Shown one piece after another: positions 27,496 through 56,367 of a DNA stretch of 64,000 bases (the stretch's first letter is position 1; each line of letters begins with the position of its first letter). The notes under the pieces were generated by a model. It was not told the DNA's origin, made no database searches, and was given only the letters and a program-made list of their open reading frames with translations. The DNA is taken from IMG/VR virus record IMGVR_UViG_3300043418_000072, positions 124,001 through 188,000 of that record. The stretch is one strand, 5' to 3'. The position numbers and the translations under genes were made by a program.

Positions 27496-27894
27496 TTAGC
27501 CCCACTTCAGCACGAATGCTGTCCTATCTTCGGCTCGTTTAAAGCAATAACGGTAGTTAATTTTATCCCATATAAATTCAGGATGCTCGTTGGAGCAGCG
27601 TGGTCCGAATGTTTCTTCACACCATGCATCAACTTGTTCGTAATGCGCCTGGGTTCCTTTGATGTTCCAGAATGCTCCTGCAGACAGGGGCAATCGTGCC
27701 CAATACCATTCCACGATGTTGTTTTCGGTTGCATGACTAGCGGCTTCATCCACGTAAGTCTCCCCGGTTTCGAGTTCGATTCCCATATCCATATGCTGCA
27801 CACCAATGATGTCAGTTGCGATCATTGTGGGCATGACCTTACGGATCATTGGGATCAAGATTTTCATTTGATCGTTGATATTCTTATCAGTCAT
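27496..27894 (-). CDS. W-cassette; N-terminal major-capsid Gol-like peptide
   Basis: DAWCEETFGP, ends AFVLKWG. Confidence 0.8.
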   Translation of the reverse strand: MTDKNINDQMKILIPMIRKVMPTMIATDIIGVQHMDMGIELETGETYVDEAASHATENNIVEWYWARLPLSAGAFWNIKGTQAHYEQVDAWCEETFGPRCSNEHPEFIWDKINYRYCFKRAEDRTAFVLKWG

Positions 27895-29052: not shown

Positions 29053-29327
29053 TAACTCCACCTTAGTACAAACAACGCATACTCTTGCTCACATAAGAAC
29101 TTGAACGTATACCTGCCAGTGTATCTCCATTGGTCACCGGCAACGAGTTCTTCTTCACGCTCGGCACTTATAAGTTTGCACCCGCGTTCTCGCAACCATC
29201 TGTATGCTTTGACATATACACTATAGCTAGGCACAGTGTGATACAACCAGTTATTACAAGATGCACCCTCGCATCTATGCTCGTGGCGACAAATATCATC
29301 CCACTCTAACTTAACGGTATCTGTCAT
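29052..29327 (-). CDS. W-cassette
   Basis: Ends LFVLRWS. Confidence 0.8.
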   Translation of the reverse strand: MTDTVKLEWDDICRHEHRCEGASCNNWLYHTVPSYSVYVKAYRWLRERGCKLISAEREEELVAGDQWRYTGRYTFKFLCEQEYALFVLRWS

Positions 29328-29662
29328 GACCACCTCAACACAAACAGAGTTAAGTCTTCCTTACTTGTAAACCAGAACTCGCGTCCAAATATTTGATATT
29401 GCGCTGTAGTGTTCAGGTGTATCCATTTCACAACCTCTGCTATTTGGTGGTTGCCTGGTGTAGCAAACTTGTCGCTAGTAAACGGTGCCTTGACCCATCC
29501 TTCTAACATAAGTCTTTGCCTTTTGATAGTGTTGACAATTTCGTCATCGATCTCTTTTTGCAATGCTGCTCCAACCTCTTGCCATACTTCGTCGTCCTCT
29601 GGCTTCTCAATGGTCCATTTGACTTTGATGGCACGAGTCTTTGCTGCAATAGTTTGTTTCAT
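29324..29662 (-). CDS. W-cassette; N-terminal major-capsid-like segment
   Basis: IAAKTRAIKVKWTIE; ends LFVLRWS. Confidence 0.8.
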   Translation of the reverse strand: MKQTIAAKTRAIKVKWTIEKPEDDEVWQEVGAALQKEIDDEIVNTIKRQRLMLEGWVKAPFTSDKFATPGNHQIAEVVKWIHLNTTAQYQIFGREFWFTSKEDLTLFVLRWS

Positions 29663-30078
29663 GACCATTTTAGTAACAGCATTGAATACAGTTCTTCGTG
29701 TATATTGTAGTTGTTGAACGTGGGGTGACCAAATCGCAGTGCGCCTGTGTTGTAGTGACGGCACCACATATCGGGGTCTTGCTCTTGCACCCACCCGCTA
29801 ATAGTTGAAGGACGACAATGCACAGTGTACCATGTAGCACCAGCTAGAGCAAACGTATCTAACTTCTGGATTTGCTCCTTAATACCCATCTCGTAGTATC
29901 TGCTCTTTAGCATTTGGTAAGTCATTGTGGACTTGCCAGTTTGTCTACCTCCGGCAAAAATCATCATTTCATCAGGATGTATTCCACCTGAGATGTTTTG
30001 AAAAACAGATGAAGACCCGCGCGGCATTACTGCTTCCATTGTTTCAATATCCAGTACTACGGTGTTGCGTTTTGTCAT
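29659..30078 (-). CDS. W-cassette; N-terminal helicase Walker A-like segment
   Basis: IFAGGRQTGKST; ends MLLLKWS. Confidence 0.8.
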   Translation of the reverse strand: MTKRNTVVLDIETMEAVMPRGSSSVFQNISGGIHPDEMMIFAGGRQTGKSTMTYQMLKSRYYEMGIKEQIQKLDTFALAGATWYTVHCRPSTISGWVQEQDPDMWCRHYNTGALRFGHPTFNNYNIHEELYSMLLLKWS

Positions 30079-43174: not shown

Positions 43175-43579
43175 TTAGTTTTTGTAGAGAACCGCAACTT
43201 TGGGGTAAGTACAACCTTCGCAACTTTGAAACAACACCCGGTCGTTGCCAATTTCATACTCTACATAGGTGTAGTGGCGATCCACATAGCTCTTACCAGA
43301 CTTTTCACGCGAACCTTCAGCAACGAATCCAACTAATGTACCAGTAACCTGTGTATTTTTGTAGTACTTTGTACTCTGGTCTGTCCACTCATAACTAACC
43401 ATGTAAGCAATTCCTACTGGAATCAACAAGATTAAAAGTACATTAAACAATTTGTATTCTTCTTCACCAGTGATATTAGAGTAAGCTGCCATCAAAAATA
43501 CAACTAACATGAATACACAAACGATAACGAAACCTTTGTGGTCAGTTACAATTGGTGCTAGTGGTTGCATTGTGTACAT
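43175..43579 (-). CDS. Membrane protein
   Basis: Two TM segments. Confidence 0.75.
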   Translation of the reverse strand: MYTMQPLAPIVTDHKGFVIVCVFMLVVFLMAAYSNITGEEEYKLFNVLLILLIPVGIAYMVSYEWTDQSTKYYKNTQVTGTLVGFVAEGSREKSGKSYVDRHYTYVEYEIGNDRVLFQSCEGCTYPKVAVLYKN

Positions 43580-43607
43580 GATAGTCCTGTTTGCTTGCTA
43601 TGTGTAT

Positions 43608-43636
43608 ATTATACAACCAAAACCATTATTGGACAA
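43608..43636 (-). promoter_or_regulatory. sigma70-type early promoter
   Basis: TTGTCC-17-TATAAT; shared leader. Confidence 0.75.
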
Positions 43637-43659
43637 CCAAAATTAGTACTACAAAAGTA

Positions 43660-43989
43660 TTAGTTTTGTAATGCCGCCCACATGTGTTTCTTTTCTAGGC
43701 GCTCAATGAATAGTGTGCGCACACGGTCTTGATCATTTAGCCAGTCTTGTACTACTGCTGGATTGCCCCAACACATGTTAGGTGCCACATTAGACATCCA
43801 TTTAGCAATCGGGACTAGGTGATCCTTGTTAACCGAGTCACAACGGCATGCTGCCGCAGTAAAATTGTTTTCCAATACTGCCTTTAAAAACCCGCCTGGC
43901 ATGTATCCGCGGATAATATAATCCTCAAACGCATCTTGCGTGTGACTTGGTACATTGTAGTGTTCCCACTCTAGCCATCGTTTTGTCAT
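43660..43989 (-). CDS. Conserved phage hypothetical protein
   Basis: YIIRGYMPGGFLKAVLENN. Confidence 0.75.
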   Translation of the reverse strand: MTKRWLEWEHYNVPSHTQDAFEDYIIRGYMPGGFLKAVLENNFTAAACRCDSVNKDHLVPIAKWMSNVAPNMCWGNPAVVQDWLNDQDRVRTLFIERLEKKHMWAALQN

Positions 43990-43990
43990 T

Positions 43991-44170
43991 CTAACTCCAT
44001 TTTAAAACAAACATCATTTCATCCTCGGGCGTGTCAAACTCAACCATAAAGTACAAGTAATCGTCTTTACGGTAGCTGTCATGAAAATGCCCATTGGGAA
44101 TATCACTGAGCCCGCTTTCAATCATGCGTTGCTGAATGTTGACCCAGTCAATCATACGGTACGTTAACAT
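43991..44170 (-). CDS. W-cassette (59 aa, not in track)
   Basis: ...VEFDTPEDEMMFVLKWS-TAG. Confidence 0.75.
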   Translation of the reverse strand: MLTYRMIDWVNIQQRMIESGLSDIPNGHFHDSYRKDDYLYFMVEFDTPEDEMMFVLKWS

Positions 44171-44171
44171 G

Positions 44172-44462
44172 TCATGCCCACTTTAGTAAGAACCAAGCAT
44201 ACTTTTGCTCGTCGAGCACTGTGGTGATAACCCTCTGTCCACTATTGTGATAGCGATACTCAAACCCATGCACATGTTTACACCATTCCCCAAAACCAAA
44301 GTCTGTGACTGTATCTTTAATCTCAGGCCACTGGCTCCATGCGTTTTGAATTGCAGTTAGTGCTTGATCCTTTGGTGCCATTATTTCCTTACAGAGGTTT
44401 GTGCCGTAGACGCTGTTTAGTTGCATCTTGCGATGCAATTTTGCCCATTCTTCTTTAGTCAT
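44172..44462 (-). CDS. W-cassette; N-terminal PolB motif B-like peptide
   Basis: RKMQLNSVYG; ends WFLLKWA. Confidence 0.8.
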   Translation of the reverse strand: MTKEEWAKLHRKMQLNSVYGTNLCKEIMAPKDQALTAIQNAWSQWPEIKDTVTDFGFGEWCKHVHGFEYRYHNSGQRVITTVLDEQKYAWFLLKWA

Positions 44463-44665
44463 GCAAACCTCAATGCAAACATGGTAGCATATTTTTCATC
44501 AGAAAAATACCAGTCAGACCATTCACCTTCACCGGTTTCCCACACATAAAACCACTCACCTCCATACTCGCCAATATTTTTTTCGCACCACTTAACTCTA
44601 GCCTCAGTGCGTTCATGGTGCCATCCATAGAGTCTGACTTCGGTCATTGGTTCACTTAATGTCAT
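44459..44665 (-). CDS. W-cassette
   Basis: WCEKNIG, ends MFALRFA. Confidence 0.8.
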   Translation of the reverse strand: MTLSEPMTEVRLYGWHHERTEARVKWCEKNIGEYGGEWFYVWETGEGEWSDWYFSDEKYATMFALRFA

Positions 44666-44856
44666 AGCCACCTCAATGCAAACAGTGTAGCATCTTCTTC
44701 TTTATGAAACCAAAATGTTCGGATAGTGTCCCATGCCCGACGCTTGCCATTAGGTTCCGGTGGTCCAAAGTTATCCAAGCACCACTTCCACGCGACCTGT
44801 GTACCACTTTCCCCGTATACATCACGAAGTTTCTTGCTGATTTTAATTTCAATCAT
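44662..44856 (-). CDS. W-cassette
   Basis: WCLDNFGP, ends LFALRWL. Confidence 0.8.
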   Translation of the reverse strand: MIEIKISKKLRDVYGESGTQVAWKWCLDNFGPPEPNGKRRAWDTIRTFWFHKEEDATLFALRWL

Positions 44857-45101
44857 GACCACCTCAACATAAACCAAGAGTACAATTCTTCGTCTTCAAA
44901 CTCGATCCAGTGCAGAACACTACTTTCAAATAAGTTGCCCACCTCTTCCATGTAGTACACTGCACGGTACTCAACCAGTGCTGCATTAACATAAGCGTCG
45001 GTTACTGCCTGTGGTCCCACTTGTTCTTGCAGGTGTGCAACAAATTTGTTCCACACAGGGATAGGTGCATAGTCTTTAACAAGATCCAATCGTATCATCA
45101 A
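44853..45101 (-). CDS. W-cassette
   Basis: Ends WFMLRWS. Confidence 0.8.
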   Translation of the reverse strand: MMIRLDLVKDYAPIPVWNKFVAHLQEQVGPQAVTDAYVNAALVEYRAVYYMEEVGNLFESSVLHWIEFEDEELYSWFMLRWS

Positions 45102-45265
45102 AACCTCAGCGCAAACTCTGTGGCTTTTAACGGGTCACGAAAACGAAAGTCCCAGCCACAGCCATCAGAACTGCACACCCAATCATTATAGTCGAGATTG
45201 GCATGGCACCATTCTGCCCCGCTGGTGTAATCATCAATTGTTACTATTGCCCATTTCGCCATCAT
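45098..45265 (-). CDS. W-cassette
   Basis: Ends EFALRF. Confidence 0.75.
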   Translation of the reverse strand: MMAKWAIVTIDDYTSGAEWCHANLDYNDWVCSSDGCGWDFRFRDPLKATEFALRF

Positions 45266-45543
45266 AAGTGCCTTAATGTAAACATAATTAGATTTTCTTC
45301 TTCGAAGAAGTCTGCATAACGCTTGCTGTATTCTGTATAAATGCGGCCACCACATGACCAAACATAATGATCAAACGCTTGACCAGCACCATAACGTAAG
45401 TTAAGTCGATCAAAGTGGTCAATCCAATGTCCCGAGGTCTTATACCCATTGTTTGCAGCCCACTTCTGGAAGATAGTGTTTAGCTGGTCGGATTCAATAC
45501 GTGCCTTTTTCATAAGGGAGTCTCTTGTATATTGCTTTTTCAT
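45262..45543 (-). CDS. W-cassette
   Basis: Ends MFTLRHL. Confidence 0.75.
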   Translation of the reverse strand: MKKQYTRDSLMKKARIESDQLNTIFQKWAANNGYKTSGHWIDHFDRLNLRYGAGQAFDHYVWSCGGRIYTEYSKRYADFFEEENLIMFTLRHL

Positions 45544-45740
45544 TTATGGATCAATGCAAACATTATAGCATCTTTTTCATTTTCGAAGTAAACGCCATGT
45601 CCTCCCATGCTAAAATGTCCGATTCCATCAAACTCTTCGCACCAAAGCAATGCCTCTATCCAACCAATGGTTTTTTGGTTTTCAGATAATGGAATGTATG
45701 TGTAGTCGCAATCCATTAGCATAGTTAGCTCTTGCTTCAT
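45540..45740 (-). CDS. W-cassette
   Basis: FENEKDAIMFAL. Confidence 0.75.
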   Translation of the reverse strand: MKQELTMLMDCDYTYIPLSENQKTIGWIEALLWCEEFDGIGHFSMGGHGVYFENEKDAIMFALIHK

Positions 45741-45967
45741 GACCACCTCAACATAAACATTGTCATGTGTTGTTCGTCAGGAAACGATACCCACAACTCG
45801 GGTTTGCGACCAACTGGTCCAACCTTAACAACATTGTAGTCTTGCTTGAGCCAATCCCAAATAGTTATGTGATGCCCGTCGTTGTTGTGTATGTCACGAC
45901 CAATGTTGTCCCAGTAGTAATTGGCAATCTTCTGAAAGTATGGGCGAATGTCTTTGCGTAGTTTCAT
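45737..45967 (-). CDS. W-cassette
   Basis: Ends MFMLRWS; close to 46433. Confidence 0.8.
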   Translation of the reverse strand: MKLRKDIRPYFQKIANYYWDNIGRDIHNNDGHHITIWDWLKQDYNVVKVGPVGRKPELWVSFPDEQHMTMFMLRWS

Positions 45968-46215
45968 GACCACCTCAACACAAACATGGTATAGTCGTGC
46001 TCGTCTTTGAAGGTCACTACAAATCTATACCCACTGTCTTTACCTTCAATACAAGCACCGACTTGAGCAATTTCTTCTTCAAGGATATGGTCCACCAATG
46101 CCGGAGGTGCGGACTTTTTAGTAATACGGCGTGCCCATACATCTGCATACCAACGCTCGAAGTAATTCCTGGGTTGTTTACAGTTGATGTTTTGGTAATA
46201 CTCTTTTACAATCAT
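45964..46215 (-). CDS. W-cassette
   Basis: Ends MFVLRWS. Confidence 0.8.
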   Translation of the reverse strand: MIVKEYYQNINCKQPRNYFERWYADVWARRITKKSAPPALVDHILEEEIAQVGACIEGKDSGYRFVVTFKDEHDYTMFVLRWS

Positions 46216-46436
46216 GACCACCTCAACACAAAGTAAGTTAAATCTTGTTCAGTGCTAAACACAATGCACTTGGTTTCGTTATTCCAGTGTGCATTGTAGT
46301 CTCTGAGAAACTCTTCTCCCGAGAGGGGAGCACGGCGGGTCTTCATCATCTCAGGTTCTATCACTGCTCTATAGAAGTTTTTGTATGCCATTGGGCTTTG
46401 GTCGTAATCGTCGGATATGTAAAGAGTTGTACTCAT
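46212..46436 (-). CDS. W-cassette
   Basis: Ends YFVLRWS. Confidence 0.8.
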   Translation of the reverse strand: MSTTLYISDDYDQSPMAYKNFYRAVIEPEMMKTRRAPLSGEEFLRDYNAHWNNETKCIVFSTEQDLTYFVLRWS

Positions 46437-46645
46437 GACCACCTCAGTATAAACCAATTGAGTGTTTTCTCATCGGGAAATGACACCACTATCTGCTGGC
46501 TGGCTGCACTGCCAAAAGTGTGGCTAATACCGTACTCACGGCCAAGCCAATCCCAGACACTAATATTAGACTTGTATAGATCATCCCAATAGTGGTTAGC
46601 AACCTTCTTGAAGTAGGGATAGATGTCTGCATAGATTTTAGTCAT
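46433..46645 (-). CDS. W-cassette
   Basis: Ends WFILRWS. Confidence 0.8.
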   Translation of the reverse strand: MTKIYADIYPYFKKVANHYWDDLYKSNISVWDWLGREYGISHTFGSAASQQIVVSFPDEKTLNWFILRWS

Positions 46646-46926
46646 GCCCACCTCAACAAGAATACTGCACGATCACGCTCGTACTTGAAGAAGATTGTTT
46701 CAAATCTCCAGATCCAGTCACGCCCAAAATGTTCTTCACACCACAGCATAACTTCTTCAAACGGTGCGGCACCATTAAACTGCCAGCAGGAGAAACAGTG
46801 ACACACAATATTAACGGCATCTGCGTCATTGGTGTACAGGCAAGGAGTCTCTGCAACAAACTCACGCAGGCGCAGGCGAAGAGTGCCGTAGATTGAATCA
46901 ATTTGCAGTGTGTCTTTTACTATCAT
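46642..46926 (-). CDS. W-cassette
   Basis: WCEEHFG, ends VFLLRWA. Confidence 0.8.
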   Translation of the reverse strand: MIVKDTLQIDSIYGTLRLRLREFVAETPCLYTNDADAVNIVCHCFSCWQFNGAAPFEEVMLWCEEHFGRDWIWRFETIFFKYERDRAVFLLRWA

Positions 46927-47144
46927 GAAAATCTCAACATAAACAACAAATAGTCGTGCTCATTCTCAAAGTAGAACTTGGTAGTCTCTGGATCTTTATC
47001 AATGGCGTTCCATTCGGATAGTGCCTGCGTGATAGAGTCGGCCTCATTGAAATCGTACCCTTGTGTTTCGGCATAGTCGCGAAAGTTTTCCCACCAATGC
47101 TTGCGTCCAGTGCCAGTTTCAGAGTCGATGTCTAGCTCAATCAT
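46923..47144 (-). CDS. W-cassette
   Basis: Ends LFMLRFS. Confidence 0.8.
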   Translation of the reverse strand: MIELDIDSETGTGRKHWWENFRDYAETQGYDFNEADSITQALSEWNAIDKDPETTKFYFENEHDYLLFMLRFS

Positions 47145-47371
47145 GACATTCTCAGTAAAAACATTACATAATCTCGTTCGTTGTTGAACACTAGAAAATT
47201 CTCTCTAGTACGCCAACTCCACTCACGCTCGGCATTAAACTCTTGTTTGACAAAGTCGAAAAACTGCATTTGAATTTTTCCAGTAGCAGTCATGTGCTTT
47301 ACAATTTTAACATTGTAATCATTTTCTGTCACAGCCACTCGATATTGCTTACGCCAGAACCGCCAGTTCAT
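47141..47371 (-). CDS. W-cassette
   Basis: Ends MFLLRMS. Confidence 0.8.
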   Translation of the reverse strand: MNWRFWRKQYRVAVTENDYNVKIVKHMTATGKIQMQFFDFVKQEFNAEREWSWRTRENFLVFNNERDYVMFLLRMS

Positions 47372-47577
47372 GAGTACTTGATCCTAAAAAATATGTATAA
47401 CTGCTCGTCGTGAAACTTGACATTATAAGTGTACTTGGCTTTGCTTTTGGCAACAGTTGCCTTCCACTTAGTTAGTTCTGTACGAATGTGTTCTTGCCCA
47501 CCAGCTGCATCAACAAAGTTGCAGAAGTAGGCATCACCGTTGCGGCCACCATAGTAATGATACTGACGTTTAATCAT
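47368..47577 (-). CDS. W-cassette
   Basis: Ends FFRIKYS. Confidence 0.75.
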   Translation of the reverse strand: MIKRQYHYYGGRNGDAYFCNFVDAAGGQEHIRTELTKWKATVAKSKAKYTYNVKFHDEQLYIFFRIKYS

Positions 47578-47930
47578 GCGCCTTTGATCTCCGTGACGTG
47601 CTTGCAGCTACCGCGGAATTTGAATCCACTGCATGTGCATGAATACATCAAGCCATCTTTACGAACAATGTACTCATCGCCCTTGCTGCCCTTAACAATC
47701 CACTGTGGGACCGTTGGTGCAACTTCTGCAGGGATCACATAGTTAAAGGTGTTGGTAACTGGCTTGAAGCTGCGACCGCGAGTGTCGATACGAATTGGGC
47801 GTTTGAATTCTTTTGCAGTGCTGTTACCCGGGGCAACATAGGCAAACATACGAGTCTTGTCATCTGACAGCAAGTAGATGCCGTTTGAAATCTTGTCTTT
47901 GTAGTCAGTAGTTTCTTGAAAGAATTTCAT
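47574..47930 (-). CDS. SWIM zinc-finger protein
   Basis: YSCTCSGFKFRGSCKH (CxCxnCxH). Confidence 0.8.
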   Translation of the reverse strand: MKFFQETTDYKDKISNGIYLLSDDKTRMFAYVAPGNSTAKEFKRPIRIDTRGRSFKPVTNTFNYVIPAEVAPTVPQWIVKGSKGDEYIVRKDGLMYSCTCSGFKFRGSCKHVTEIKGA

Positions 47931-47958
47931 GGTTGACCCTTTTGTTTGCGATATATGT

Positions 47959-47987
47959 ATTATACATGAACGCTCATTATGGGTCAA
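47959..47987 (-). promoter_or_regulatory. sigma70-type promoter heading W-array 2
   Basis: TTGACC-17-TATAAT. Confidence 0.85.
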
Positions 47988-48003
47988 CCAAAAAAAGTAG
48001 TAC

Positions 48004-48180
48004 TCAAGTATTAGTAAACTTTAGCGCAAAAAACGTGCTCATAGGACCATCTTCGATAGTAACTACATATCCCGGCCATTCCCGTTTAAACGGCCAGTGC
48101 TTTACTTTGGACTCTTTGAGAGCTTGCCTGACTGAGTTTATATCTTTATACGGAACTTTTAGTTCAATCGTCTTCTTCAT
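48004..48180 (-). CDS. W-cassette-like protein
   Basis: TFFALKF. Confidence 0.65.
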   Translation of the reverse strand: MKKTIELKVPYKDINSVRQALKESKVKHWPFKREWPGYVVTIEDGPMSTFFALKFTNT

Positions 48181-48739
48181 CGTCAAATCCTTCATTGCCG
48201 CGCATCTCGATATGAATGTATTGGTTATCATAATCCTTATGGTATGCTTCGTTTGCATTTAGCACACGATACTGGTTGGGATACTTGAGTGCTAACATTA
48301 GCATATCATCTCTATTTGTGATCTCGGTAATGATGTACTCAGTGCCACATGCACCGTCTACGTGTTTGATCATGCCATGTTTAAACTCATTGTCGATAAT
48401 AGCAGTGGTTAAATTACTGTGCATAGGCACAATGATGCGATCAAATGGCAAGTGCGGTGTAGGTAAGTTACGATCTAGTATTCCTAATTTGGATAACGTT
48501 GCACAGTTATCTTGGTCAATGGTTAGCTTACATCGCTTGAACTTGATGCTGCCTTTGGTACTGGGATTATCGGGTGTTTCCTTGGTGCTCCAAGGGATTT
48601 CTGCTGTTACGTGATGCACGTAAAAAGTGACTCCGTGTGATTTAATGACCCACATGGGAATGGTCGGATCTGTAAGATGTCCCTTATTGAAGTGGAACAC
48701 TAATTCCTTACATTGGTAGTTGATCTAGGCTTGTGACAT
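48164..48739 (-). CDS. Hypothetical protein with in-frame TAG at codon 5 (candidate read-through gene)
   Basis: AAAGGAG-6nt-ATG TCA CAA GCC TAG ATC AAC..., in frame with the 178-aa track ORF. Confidence 0.65.
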
Positions 48740-48753
48740 GAGTTTCTCCTTTG

Positions 48754-49047
48754 TTATGTCGTTGTAATATTATATATGCCTTTAAGGCCGTCTGTCAATT
48801 CATTTAGACGATCTCGATAGCGAAGTTGTAGATATGTGTACTGCGCTGGGGTAACATTTCTAAACACCACACGATCAAGGTGATGAACAACTCGTTGTTC
48901 GGTTGCCATATCGCGCCACCCACTGTCAAACATACTGGACTCGGGTTTGAGACCATGTGTGTTAACTAGGTCAAAGTCCATATCGGTTTCGTTAAGAAAC
49001 TCTACATCATCTGAATTAAGGGCGTTGCGTAATAAGTAATCAGTCAT
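48754..49047 (-). CDS. W-cassette-like variant
   Basis: YLQLRY; similar to 33725. Confidence 0.6.
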   Translation of the reverse strand: MTDYLLRNALNSDDVEFLNETDMDFDLVNTHGLKPESSMFDSGWRDMATEQRVVHHLDRVVFRNVTPAQYTYLQLRYRDRLNELTDGLKGIYNITTT

Positions 49048-50280: not shown

Positions 50281-50394
50281 ACCATAGTTAAGTACACTGC
50301 CGGAGTAGCAAGAACCAACTTGCCCACTTTGTTCCGTCCTGGATAGATTACTCTACTGGTTCCCAGGCAAACCGCTAATGTACTTAACTATGGT
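50281..50394 (-). ncRNA. Structured tRNA 3' trailer closed by a perfect 16-bp inverted repeat
   Basis: ACCATAGTTAAGTACA (50281-50296) / TGTACTTAACTATGGT (50379-50394); internal GNRA hairpin. Confidence 0.6.
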
Positions 50395-50465
50395 GCGCTA
50401 GGCGGGAATCGAACCCGCGATTCAGAGGTTTAGAAACTCCTGCTATACCATTTAGCTACTAGCGC
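50391..50465 (-). tRNA. tRNA with CUA anticodon (amber suppressor), CCA encoded
   Basis: 75-nt cloverleaf GCGCTAG...TT-CTA-AA...TTCGATT...CTAGCGC-A-CCA. Confidence 0.9.
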
Positions 50466-55605: not shown

Positions 55606-55631
55606 AGAAAATAGGGGCCGAAGCCCCTATT
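55606..55631 (-). terminator. Terminator after tmRNA
   Basis: AATAGGGGC-TTCG-GCCCCTATT-TTCT. Confidence 0.85.
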
Positions 55632-55632
55632 A

Positions 55633-55953
55633 CTATTTCCTGTTGCAAGGCATAGCTGCCCCGGAAGCCTTTATCAGGCAACCATTAGAAACTGTGAGTC
55701 GTTTGCATTTACTTTTTTTGCTTCTACGGCCGGGAAACCCCAACCCTACGGCTTCTGCTTTGCCGAGCTGTCCACTTGTTTACTTGTTGCCCTGTCGAAA
55801 CCATGGCAGGCCCATCAAAAACATACTAAGCACTTTACACCGATATCGTTTCTTAAGTTCGCCCACGATGTATCGAATAGTACGCTTTTGGTGGACCTGG
55901 CGGGAGTCGAACCCGCGTCCAGAACACTTTTCTCTTTGCTTCATACAGCAATA
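55633..55953 (-). ncRNA. ssrA: Circularly permuted two-piece tmRNA; tag ANDSQFLMVA
   Basis: Acceptor piece ends ...GGGTTCGACTCCCGCCAGGTCCACCA (55889) before coding piece GGGCCTG... (55813); G3-U70; tag 55674-55706; ends approximate. Confidence 0.9.
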
Positions 55954-55980
55954 ACTTATATTATAGCACAAGACTATAAT

Positions 55981-56367
55981 TTAACGACCTGTAGTTGTCC
56001 AATCCAGCACAACTTCATCGGTGGTAGCATCTCGTAATTGGTAACGGCGTTCAATTCCTGATGCTTGCTGAAAAGAAGCAACAGTAGTGGACTCGCCATC
56101 GACATGTGCTTGAGCTTGATTTTCTAACGCCAGTTCGTCGAAACATTTGTTAAACTGCTCAACTGATTCAAACATCATAGTTACTGTAGTGACTACAGAT
56201 CCATCAGGCATGTCAGCTCGTGTAGTGACATTTAACTCAGATCCGGGTGCGCTATACTTTGCAATTATTGCATCACGTGCATCATACACATGCTTGAATT
56301 CCGGGCGGTGTAGTGGTCTAACTGCCCCAGCTGGTGTAGTAATTTCTTTAATATACTTGATCATCAA
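55981..56367 (-). CDS. Hypothetical protein
   Basis: TAAATA at 56384-56389, GGAG RBS. Confidence 0.75.
   Translation of the reverse strand: MMIKYIKEITTPAGAVRPLHRPEFKHVYDARDAIIAKYSAPGSELNVTTRADMPDGSVVTTVTMMFESVEQFNKCFDELALENQAQAHVDGESTTVASFQQASGIERRYQLRDATTDEVVLDWTTTGR

What the first reader, a model, noticed from the sequence alone, without database searches (positions are those of the whole stretch)
43991..49047. W-array 2: 16 more cassettes, enriched for a different subfamily
Seen: an uninterrupted run 43991-47577 behind a promoter and a SWIM finger gene. Many members have an F/W-x-N-F...L-x-x-Y/W-N-A pattern (44853, 46212, 46923, 47368) instead of WC.E.FG. 45737 and 46433 are close paralogues (DI.PYF.K.AN.YWD, WDWL, VSFPDE). 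Identical junction 21-mers are shared with array 1, 16 kb away. Inferred: local duplication plus exchange between arrays.
Basis: partly seen in the sequence, partly recalled or inferred. Interest (0 to 1): 0.65.

Follow-up and report, generated by a model that had tools for sequence, protein, structure and literature searches.

The report
Coupled small-gene cassette array in phage
A 354-kb freshwater phage carries an operon of 16 back-to-back small genes from a large, unnamed phage protein family, and the conserved last codons of each gene also supply the ribosome-binding site and start codon of the next gene.

Summary
Window 43991-47577 (- strand) holds 16 contiguous genes of 55-96 aa. They sit behind a sigma-70-like promoter (47987-47959) and a SWIM-like gene. 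All end in ..F.F..E.D...F-x-L-R-W-S.

They belong to a family with 39 copies in this phage, all on one strand, and about 3,700 protein clusters in metagenomes. Pfam, PHROGs, NCBIfam and PADLOC have no model for it. AlphaFold gives a small beta-alpha(-alpha)-beta-beta-alpha domain with no PDB relative.

The "identical junction 21-mers" are a dual-coding element. TTG AGG TGG TCA TGA encodes L-R-W-S-stop and also provides the Shine-Dalgarno sequence and the overlapping ATG for the next cassette. They are not gene-conversion tracts.

The paralogues are old: at most 39% identical, a star-like tree, no clustering by array. Each is under purifying selection (dN/dS 0.05-0.44).

Recent local duplication is not supported. 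Cassette flux is supported: a close relative differs by whole-cassette insertions, deletions and replacements, and every breakpoint lies in the conserved tails. One of these is a copy of an array-1 cassette placed in array 2. More distant relatives mix the two arrays.

The function is inferred only: early host-takeover or anti-defence binding proteins.

The parts
47959..47987 (-). Sigma-70-like promoter TTGACC-17-TATAAT, of the phage's repeated early-promoter class
   Evidence: 11 of 12 positions; sequence; the same class is repeated at 43162-43134 and 43636-43608
47574..47930 (-). First gene of the operon, 118 aa, SWIM-like zinc finger (CxC..CxH)
   Evidence: PF04434 E 0.015, below the cut-off; 98% identical in relative L001, dN/dS 0.02
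47368..47577 (-). Cassette 1, 69 aa, xNF subfamily, tail FFRIKYS
   Evidence: AF2 model pLDDT 86; dN/dS 0.05
47141..47371 (-). Cassette 2, 76 aa
   Evidence: dN/dS 0.08
46923..47144 (-). Cassette 3, 73 aa, xNF subfamily
   Evidence: dN/dS 0.09
46642..46926 (-). Cassette 4, 94 aa, WC type
   Evidence: 85% identical orthologue in distant relative L022
46433..46645 (-). Cassette 5, 70 aa, paralogue of 45737 (39% identity); absent from relative L001
46212..46436 (-). Cassette 6, 74 aa, xNF subfamily (moderate support)
   Evidence: dN/dS 0.44, the highest in the array
45964..46215 (-). Cassette 7, 83 aa, variant of the xNF subfamily
45737..45967 (-). Cassette 8, 76 aa, DI.PYF..WDWL type; widely conserved orthologues
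45540..45740 (-). Cassette 9, 66 aa, WC type, tail FALIHK
45262..45543 (-). Cassette 10, 93 aa, tail FTLRHL
   Evidence: 96% identical in L001
45098..45265 (-). Cassette 11, 55 aa, WC type; replaced by other sequence in a co-occurring strain
44853..45098 (-). Cassette 12, 81 aa, xNF-like subfamily (moderate support)
44662..44856 (-). Cassette 13, 64 aa, WC type; the protein that was modelled
   Evidence: AF2 pLDDT 81, beta-alpha-beta-beta-alpha
44459..44665 (-). Cassette 14, 68 aa, WC type; replaced by a non-orthologous cassette in L001
44172..44462 (-). Cassette 15, 96 aa, WC type
43991..44170 (-). Cassette 16, 59 aa, last family member
45964..45984 (-). Junction 21-mer TTTGTGTTGAGGTGGTCATGA, which encodes FVLRWS-stop and holds the SD and overlapping ATG. 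Identical copies lie at 46212-46232 and, in array 1, at 29324-29344
43660..43989 (-). 109-aa gene that ends the operon; not a family member; missing in a co-occurring strain and in L001
48004..48180 (-). 58-aa gene upstream of the promoter; possible remote family member (..YVVTIEDGPMSTFFALKFTNT); unproven
   Evidence: hhalign aligns the tail in register but with probability 4.8%

Best explanation
Array 2 is one early operon: a promoter recognised by host RNA polymerase, a SWIM-like gene, 16 family cassettes and one unrelated gene. All are translationally coupled.

Each cassette encodes a small single-domain protein. The N-terminal half is variable. The core is conserved and built from aromatic residues (helix ..W[C]..., strand F.F, helix E.D...F.LRW), and it ends exactly at the C-terminus.

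The last five codons do two jobs. They encode L-R-W-S-stop, and their DNA (GAGGTGG..ATGA) is the Shine-Dalgarno sequence and start codon of the next cassette. Any cassette placed at a junction is therefore expressed.

The 16 paralogues are ancient, and each is kept by purifying selection. Array composition changes through homologous recombination between the conserved tails. This adds, removes or swaps whole cassettes and, over longer times, moves them between arrays.

Shown: gene family, coupling, dual coding, selection and cassette flux.

Inferred: early timing, and the function. The most likely function is a diversified set of early host-takeover or counter-defence binding proteins that share one scaffold and differ in surface and N-terminal part.
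For: - Family and copy number: 39 matches in the genome, all on the - strand, within window 26776-47577 plus one just outside the window.
- Coupling: ATGA overlaps.
- Dual coding within this genome: 17 of 22 Arg tails use AGG, against 4.6% of Arg codons genome-wide.
- Dual coding in 75 other viral contigs: AGG in 181 of 266 coupled tails against 21 of 90 uncoupled tails, Fisher p 1.6e-13. L-R-W is kept with other codons when the tail is uncoupled, so the protein is also constrained.
- Selection: dN/dS 0.05-0.44 for 13 orthologous cassettes.
- Fold: two AF2 models, pLDDT 81 and 86, with the same topology.
- Spread: 3,675 clusters at E<=1e-3, with the domain at the C-terminal end in nearly all of the 150 listed. 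There are 1-26 same-strand copies per 20 kb in 80 viral loci.
- Cassette flux: collinear DNA blocks against L001 break only in the tails. There is an inter-array paralogue at 64% identity. Orthologue order is shuffled in L012, L022 and L045. Strain contigs diverge at cassette borders 46642, 44853 and 46433.
- Diverse surfaces: pI ranges from 4.2 to 9.8.
- Transcription: a metatranscriptome library holds identical multi-cassette contigs.
Against: - There is no functional evidence of any kind. No family, structure or defence-database match exists.
- The RNA-library contigs do not prove transcription, because DNA can be present in such libraries.
- Early timing rests only on promoter consensus matches. 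The scan found 22 promoter-like sites where shuffles gave 14.5.
- BLAST tends to extend alignments into paralogous tails, which biases breakpoints toward them.
- No cultured phage carries the family, so no experimental anchor exists.
Confidence: 0.6

Rival explanations
1. One reading: the array grows by recent local tandem duplication, and gene conversion between the two arrays homogenises the junctions.
For: Identical 21-mers are shared by arrays 16 kb apart. The xNF subfamily is confined to array 2. 45737 and 46433 are each other's best match.
Against: The best pair is only 39% identical. Cassette bodies share no exact match longer than 12 nt, and the arrays share no 24-mer. The tree is star-like with no clustering by array. 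Only 7 of 16 array-2 members have their best hit within array 2. Each subfamily member has its own orthologue in distant phages, so the duplications are old. The junction identity is explained by the coding plus SD constraint.
Confidence: 0.1
2. The junction repeat is a site for a dedicated recombinase, as attC is for an integron, and the conserved protein tail is a by-product.
For: Cassette indels fall exactly at junctions. The array is unidirectional and driven from one promoter.
Against: The genome has no tyrosine integrase. L-R-W is kept with different codons when no gene follows, and upstream residues (F.F..E.D...F) are conserved at the protein level with synonymous variation. The junction has no inverted-repeat structure. 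Serine recombinases and homing endonucleases were not searched for.
Confidence: 0.07
3. The cassettes are nucleic-acid-binding regulators related to KH or RRM domains.
For: The subfamily model has the beta-alpha-alpha-beta-beta-alpha order of a type I KH domain. The top weak Foldseek rows are KH domains, at E 0.2-1 and TM 0.40-0.47. KH and RRM chains appear at Z 4.4-5.0.
Against: No match is significant. The inter-helix loop has no conserved GXXG (alignment A4). pI ranges from 4.2 to 9.8. The conserved residues are core aromatics, not a basic surface.
Confidence: 0.1
4. The invariant C-terminal L-R-W-S-COOH is a shared targeting or degradation signal, for example for packaging into the capsid or for handing to a protease. 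The variable parts are the cargo.
For: The domain ends at the C-terminus in nearly all of the top 150 clusters. Some members carry fragments of the major capsid protein.
Against: In both models the tail is part of the last helix of the folded domain. There is no proteomic or structural evidence. The SD function already explains part of the conservation.
Confidence: 0.08

Closest known systems
PeSL-mediated modular shuffling in hyperplastic regions of T4-type phages (Arbiol et al. 2010, PMC2839356; PMC4122927)
   Same: In both, clusters of small non-essential early genes in a T4-type genome differ between close relatives by insertion, deletion and replacement of modules, through recombination between short conserved motifs. 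This phage also has repeated early-promoter cassettes at the array ends. The replacement of genes 43660 and 43175 has its ends in those promoter repeats.
   Different: Inside the array the recombining motif is not a promoter-terminator unit. It is a coding tail plus SD plus overlapping start. The shuffled modules are homologous members of one protein family. No stem-loop terminators lie at the junctions.
Integron gene-cassette arrays (from general knowledge)
   Same: A unidirectional array of promoterless cassettes read from one upstream promoter, with cassette-level gain and loss at conserved junctions.
   Different: There is no integrase and no attC hairpin. The cassettes are paralogues. The junction lies inside the coding sequence. 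Exchange appears to use ordinary homologous recombination.
T4 early-gene clusters of small host-takeover ORFs with translational coupling (from general knowledge)
   Same: Sigma-70-type early promoters, many ORFs under 100 aa, overlapping stop and start codons, and no known homologues.
   Different: Here 16 adjacent genes (39 in the genome) belong to one family, and the coupling signal is built into the conserved protein tail.
Type I KH domain fold
   Same: The beta-alpha-alpha-beta-beta-alpha order of the xNF-subfamily model.
   Different: There is no GXXG loop, and Foldseek gives E above 0.2 with TM below 0.5. This is a resemblance of topology only.

Membership tests
Any Pfam, PHROGs, NCBIfam or PADLOC family (for the cassettes) | Profile HMM match at or above the family threshold | tested here: not met
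   No hit for window cassettes or for 10 metagenomic relatives. The only significant hits are Gp23 fragments in the N-terminal parts of some members.
SWIM zinc finger (PF04434), for gene 47574-47930 | CxCxnCxH signature and an HMM score at or above 19.6 bits | tested here: inconclusive
   The signature is present (CTCSGFKFRGSCKH). The HMM scores 15.3 bits, E 0.015, below the cut-off.
Type I KH domain | beta-alpha-alpha-beta-beta-alpha fold with a GXXG loop between helices 1 and 2 | tested here: not met
   The topology matches in model m5a238aa964c0. The loop is not conserved as GXXG in A4. Best Foldseek E is 0.22.
PeSL regulatory cassettes | A strong sigma-70-like promoter plus a stem-loop terminator flanking the shuffled ORFs | tested here: not met
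   The 16 internal junctions are stop/start overlaps with no promoter-terminator unit. Repeated promoters exist only at the array ends.
Integron | Tyrosine integrase plus attC recombination sites | tested here: not met
   PF00589 is absent from the 354-kb genome, while the controls are positive. The junction lies within coding sequence.
The new LRW-tail family itself (working definition) | C-terminal ..[FWY].F..E.D...F.L[RK]W[SA]-COOH, matched by the profile of A2 | tested here: met
   All 16 cassettes match. 47368 is the weakest with the C-terminal seed HMM (E 0.045), but scores 37.8 bits with the full profile.

The most novel reading that the evidence does not exclude
The array is a recombinase-free, plug-and-play cassette system. 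Because the conserved coding tail carries the SD and start codon for whatever follows, any family cassette recombined into any junction is expressed at once. Phages could then trade a large arsenal of scaffolded counter-defence or host-takeover binders. That arsenal would include members that display fragments of the major capsid protein, as decoys or competitors for capsid-sensing immunity or for rival phages.
Probability: 0.2. Interest if true: 0.8.

Novelty: new variant of a known kind. Interest (0 to 1): 0.6.

Why it matters
The family takes up about 2.6% of a jumbo phage genome and has thousands of clusters in freshwater viromes, yet it has no name, no database model and no solved structure.

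The junction is a clear natural case of one short DNA segment serving three purposes: a conserved protein terminus, a ribosome-binding site, and a recombination homology. That would explain how phage accessory-gene arrays can be reshuffled without losing expression.

If the proteins prove to be host-takeover or anti-defence binders, the family would be a large untapped source of small inhibitors. It would also be a model for how phages diversify such arsenals.

Tried and rejected
- Megablast of the region, and tblastn of two members, against 50,697 cultured-phage records. Result: nothing, apart from one E 0.07 hit in Sinorhizobium phage Phosso.
- Foldseek against the PDB and VIA-align wide search for both models. 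Result: only generic alpha/beta sandwiches, best Z 5.0.
- BFVD and ESM Atlas. Result: only uncharacterised proteins of uncultured phages.
- PADLOC. Result: nothing.
- Bacterial genome collection.
- hhalign of the family profile against flanking genes 48004, 48754 and 43660. Result: not significant.
- SWIM as a constant partner of the arrays. Rejected, because it appears in only 6 of 82 loci.
- Literature searches for a described family or array. Result: none beyond the PeSL papers.
- A joint in DNA run X1 that skips 45985-46212. It has only 24 nt on its shorter side and lies on the repeated junction 21-mer, so I treat it as an assembly ambiguity and not a deletion variant.
- No complex prediction was run, because no specific binding pair is claimed.
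Full report
**Context.** The window is bases 124001-188000 of a 354,098-bp virus record that CheckV rates as complete. The phage has a T4-type major capsid gene, which is cut by the contig end. It also has an ATP-dependent ligase at most 35% identical to those of cultured phages and a GroES-like gene. DNA runs that hold the stretch come from freshwater metagenomes. A permuted tmRNA of the betaproteobacterial type in the window hints at the host.

**The observation.** On the - strand, 43991-47577 holds 16 contiguous genes of 55-96 aa. Fourteen starts overlap the preceding stop as ATGA, one as TGATG, and one follows a 1-nt spacer. All 16 end in a shared motif..[FWY].F..E.D...F.L[RK]W[SA]-stop. 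An HMM built from the tails and iterated over all ORFs of the genome finds about 38 members. A six-frame search with the profile of alignment A2 finds 39. All are on the - strand between window 26776 and 47577, except one just past the window end.

Upstream lie a SWIM-like gene (47574-47930) and a TTGACC-17-TATAAT promoter at 47987-47959. The SWIM gene shows the CxC..CxH signature but scores below the Pfam cut-off. The three genes further upstream, out to 49047, could not be shown to belong to the family.

**Real genes.** A close relative, L001, comes from a 320,767-bp contig of another sample. Its flanking genes are 89-99% identical to the window's, and it carries the same array. For 13 orthologous cassettes dN/dS is 0.05-0.44, while dS is 0.34-1.7. 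The cassettes are therefore protein-coding and under purifying selection. A metatranscriptome library holds contigs identical to 44360-47694, several of them spanning more than one cassette. This fits transcription but does not prove it, because such libraries can contain DNA.

**The protein family.** Pfam, PHROGs, NCBIfam and PADLOC give no match for the window cassettes, and the first three also give none for the domain in ten metagenomic relatives. An exhaustive profile search of 1.84 billion representative proteins finds 3,675 clusters at E<=1e-3. The best 150 are 56-233 aa long, and the match ends at or within a few residues of the C-terminus in nearly all of them.

In IMG/VR at least 314 stretches encode a relative. 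In 80 fetched loci there are 1-26 copies per 20 kb, always on one strand. Cultured phages and bacterial genomes gave nothing.

AlphaFold2 predicts two related structures:
- 44662-44856: beta-alpha-beta-beta-alpha, pLDDT 81.
- 47368-47577: beta-alpha-alpha-beta-beta-alpha, pLDDT 86.

Neither model has a significant PDB match. The best Foldseek E is 0.22 and the best VIA Z is 5.0, and the rows are generic alpha/beta sandwiches. BFVD and the ESM Atlas return only uncharacterised proteins of uncultured phages. The conserved residues are mostly aromatic or hydrophobic, and pI ranges from 4.2 to 9.8. This suggests a common scaffold with diversified surfaces.

**The subfamily claim.** 47368, 45964 and 46923 join one another through iterated search that includes their orthologues in six or more other phages. 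WC-type controls align over the 17-18-residue tail only, although the score difference is modest. No array-1 gene joined this subfamily. The enrichment is therefore real. The members are only about 20-27% identical, though, and each has its own orthologue in distant phages, so the split is ancient.

**The junction.** The only 21-mer shared by the two arrays is TTTGTGTTGAGGTGGTCATGA, at 29324, 45964 and 46212. The longest run shared between arrays is 23 nt. It reads F-V-L-R-W-S-stop and contains GAGGTGG, a Shine-Dalgarno sequence, placed before the ATG that overlaps the stop.

AGG makes up 4.6% of Arg codons in the long ORFs of this genome. It fills 17 of the 22 Arg positions in the tails.

The same holds in 484 family genes from 75 other contigs. 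Of these, 68% are coupled to the next gene. AGG is used in 181 of 266 coupled tails and in 21 of 90 uncoupled tails (p 1.6e-13). L-R-W persists with AGA, CGA and AAA codons where no gene follows. The tail is therefore constrained as protein and also as a translation signal. That double constraint is enough to explain the identical 21-mers.

**Duplication and exchange.** Within this genome there is no sign of recent events:
- The closest pair, 45737 and 46433, is 39% identical, and 30866 in array 1 is 32% identical to 45737.
- Cassette bodies share no exact match longer than 12 nt.
- The tree has no well-supported branch. The array label needs 12 changes, as many as shuffled labels do.

Between genomes, however, cassettes clearly come and go. 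Against L001 the DNA aligns in collinear blocks that end in the conserved tails. Between the blocks, L001 has four extra cassettes, lacks one, and has one replaced. At the array's end, the unrelated genes 43660 and 43175 are replaced in L001 by a family cassette. One extra L001 cassette in array 2 is 64% identical to that phage's own array-1 gene, the orthologue of window 29052.

In L022 and L012, orthologues of window array-1 and array-2 genes are interleaved. Contigs of co-occurring strains diverge at cassette borders 46642, 44853 and 46433. One strain replaces cassette 45098 and another lacks gene 43660. One caveat applies: alignment extension into paralogous tails biases apparent breakpoints toward the tails.

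**Interpretation.** The best-supported picture is an early, translationally coupled operon of ancient paralogues. Its dual-coding junctions also act as homology for cassette exchange. This is a variant of the modular shuffling described for T4-type hyperplastic regions (PMC2839356), with the recombining motif inside the coding sequence. The genome has no integrase. The function is inferred only. By analogy with early small phage proteins, these are probably binders of host or defence components.

Noticed in passing
window 27496-27894 (-), array 1; also proteins P0072 and P0191: This family member carries an N-terminal fragment of the T4-type major capsid protein (PF07068 positions 5-32, 27.6 bits, above the cut-off). 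The same fusion occurs in unrelated metagenomic proteins. From memory, this segment corresponds to the T4 gp23 region that holds the Gol peptide. It could be a decoy or an assembly competitor.
   Followed up: partly
window 29324-29794 and 29659-30078 (-), array 1: A second, sub-threshold capsid-protein fragment (PF07068 positions 124-194, 19.5 bits) and a P-loop piece (GGRQTGKS; AAA_14 E 0.0027) lie in the N-terminal parts of two other family members.
   Followed up: partly
window 50391-50465 (-): A tRNA with a CUA anticodon, that is, an amber suppressor. ARAGORN calls it tRNA-Pyl, and Rfam tRNA scores 66.7 bits. TAG is still used as a stop at 43991.
   Followed up: no
window 55608-55998 (-): A phage-encoded permuted tmRNA of the betaproteobacterial type (RF01850 110 bits, RF04321 111 bits, tag ANDSQFLMVA). 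This is a hint that the host is a freshwater betaproteobacterium.
   Followed up: partly
window 9479, 42793, 43116, 43590, 58254 (- strand), and 47959-47987: Repeated promoter cassettes of about 45 nt, TTGAC.-..ATAATG.TTTTGGT..TATAATATACACATAG. They resemble the promoter half of PeSLs. The gene replacement at 43175-43989 relative to L001 ends in them.
   Followed up: partly
window 6221, 6768, 8299, 39800, 40692 (- strand): A repeated motif of about 23-33 nt, AACATTTCGGAGTTGAAGAATGA, sits over the ribosome-binding site and start codon of five genes. It may be a shared translational or late-transcription signal.
   Followed up: no
G000 353941-354096, outside the window: The contig ends inside the major capsid gene, and the N-terminal two thirds of that gene are absent from the record, although the genome is rated complete.
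   Followed up: no
window 43175-43579 (-): A 134-aa protein that appears to have two hydrophobic helices. It has its own promoter and lies between the array and the ligase. It is absent from L001 and from all other fetched loci.
   Followed up: no
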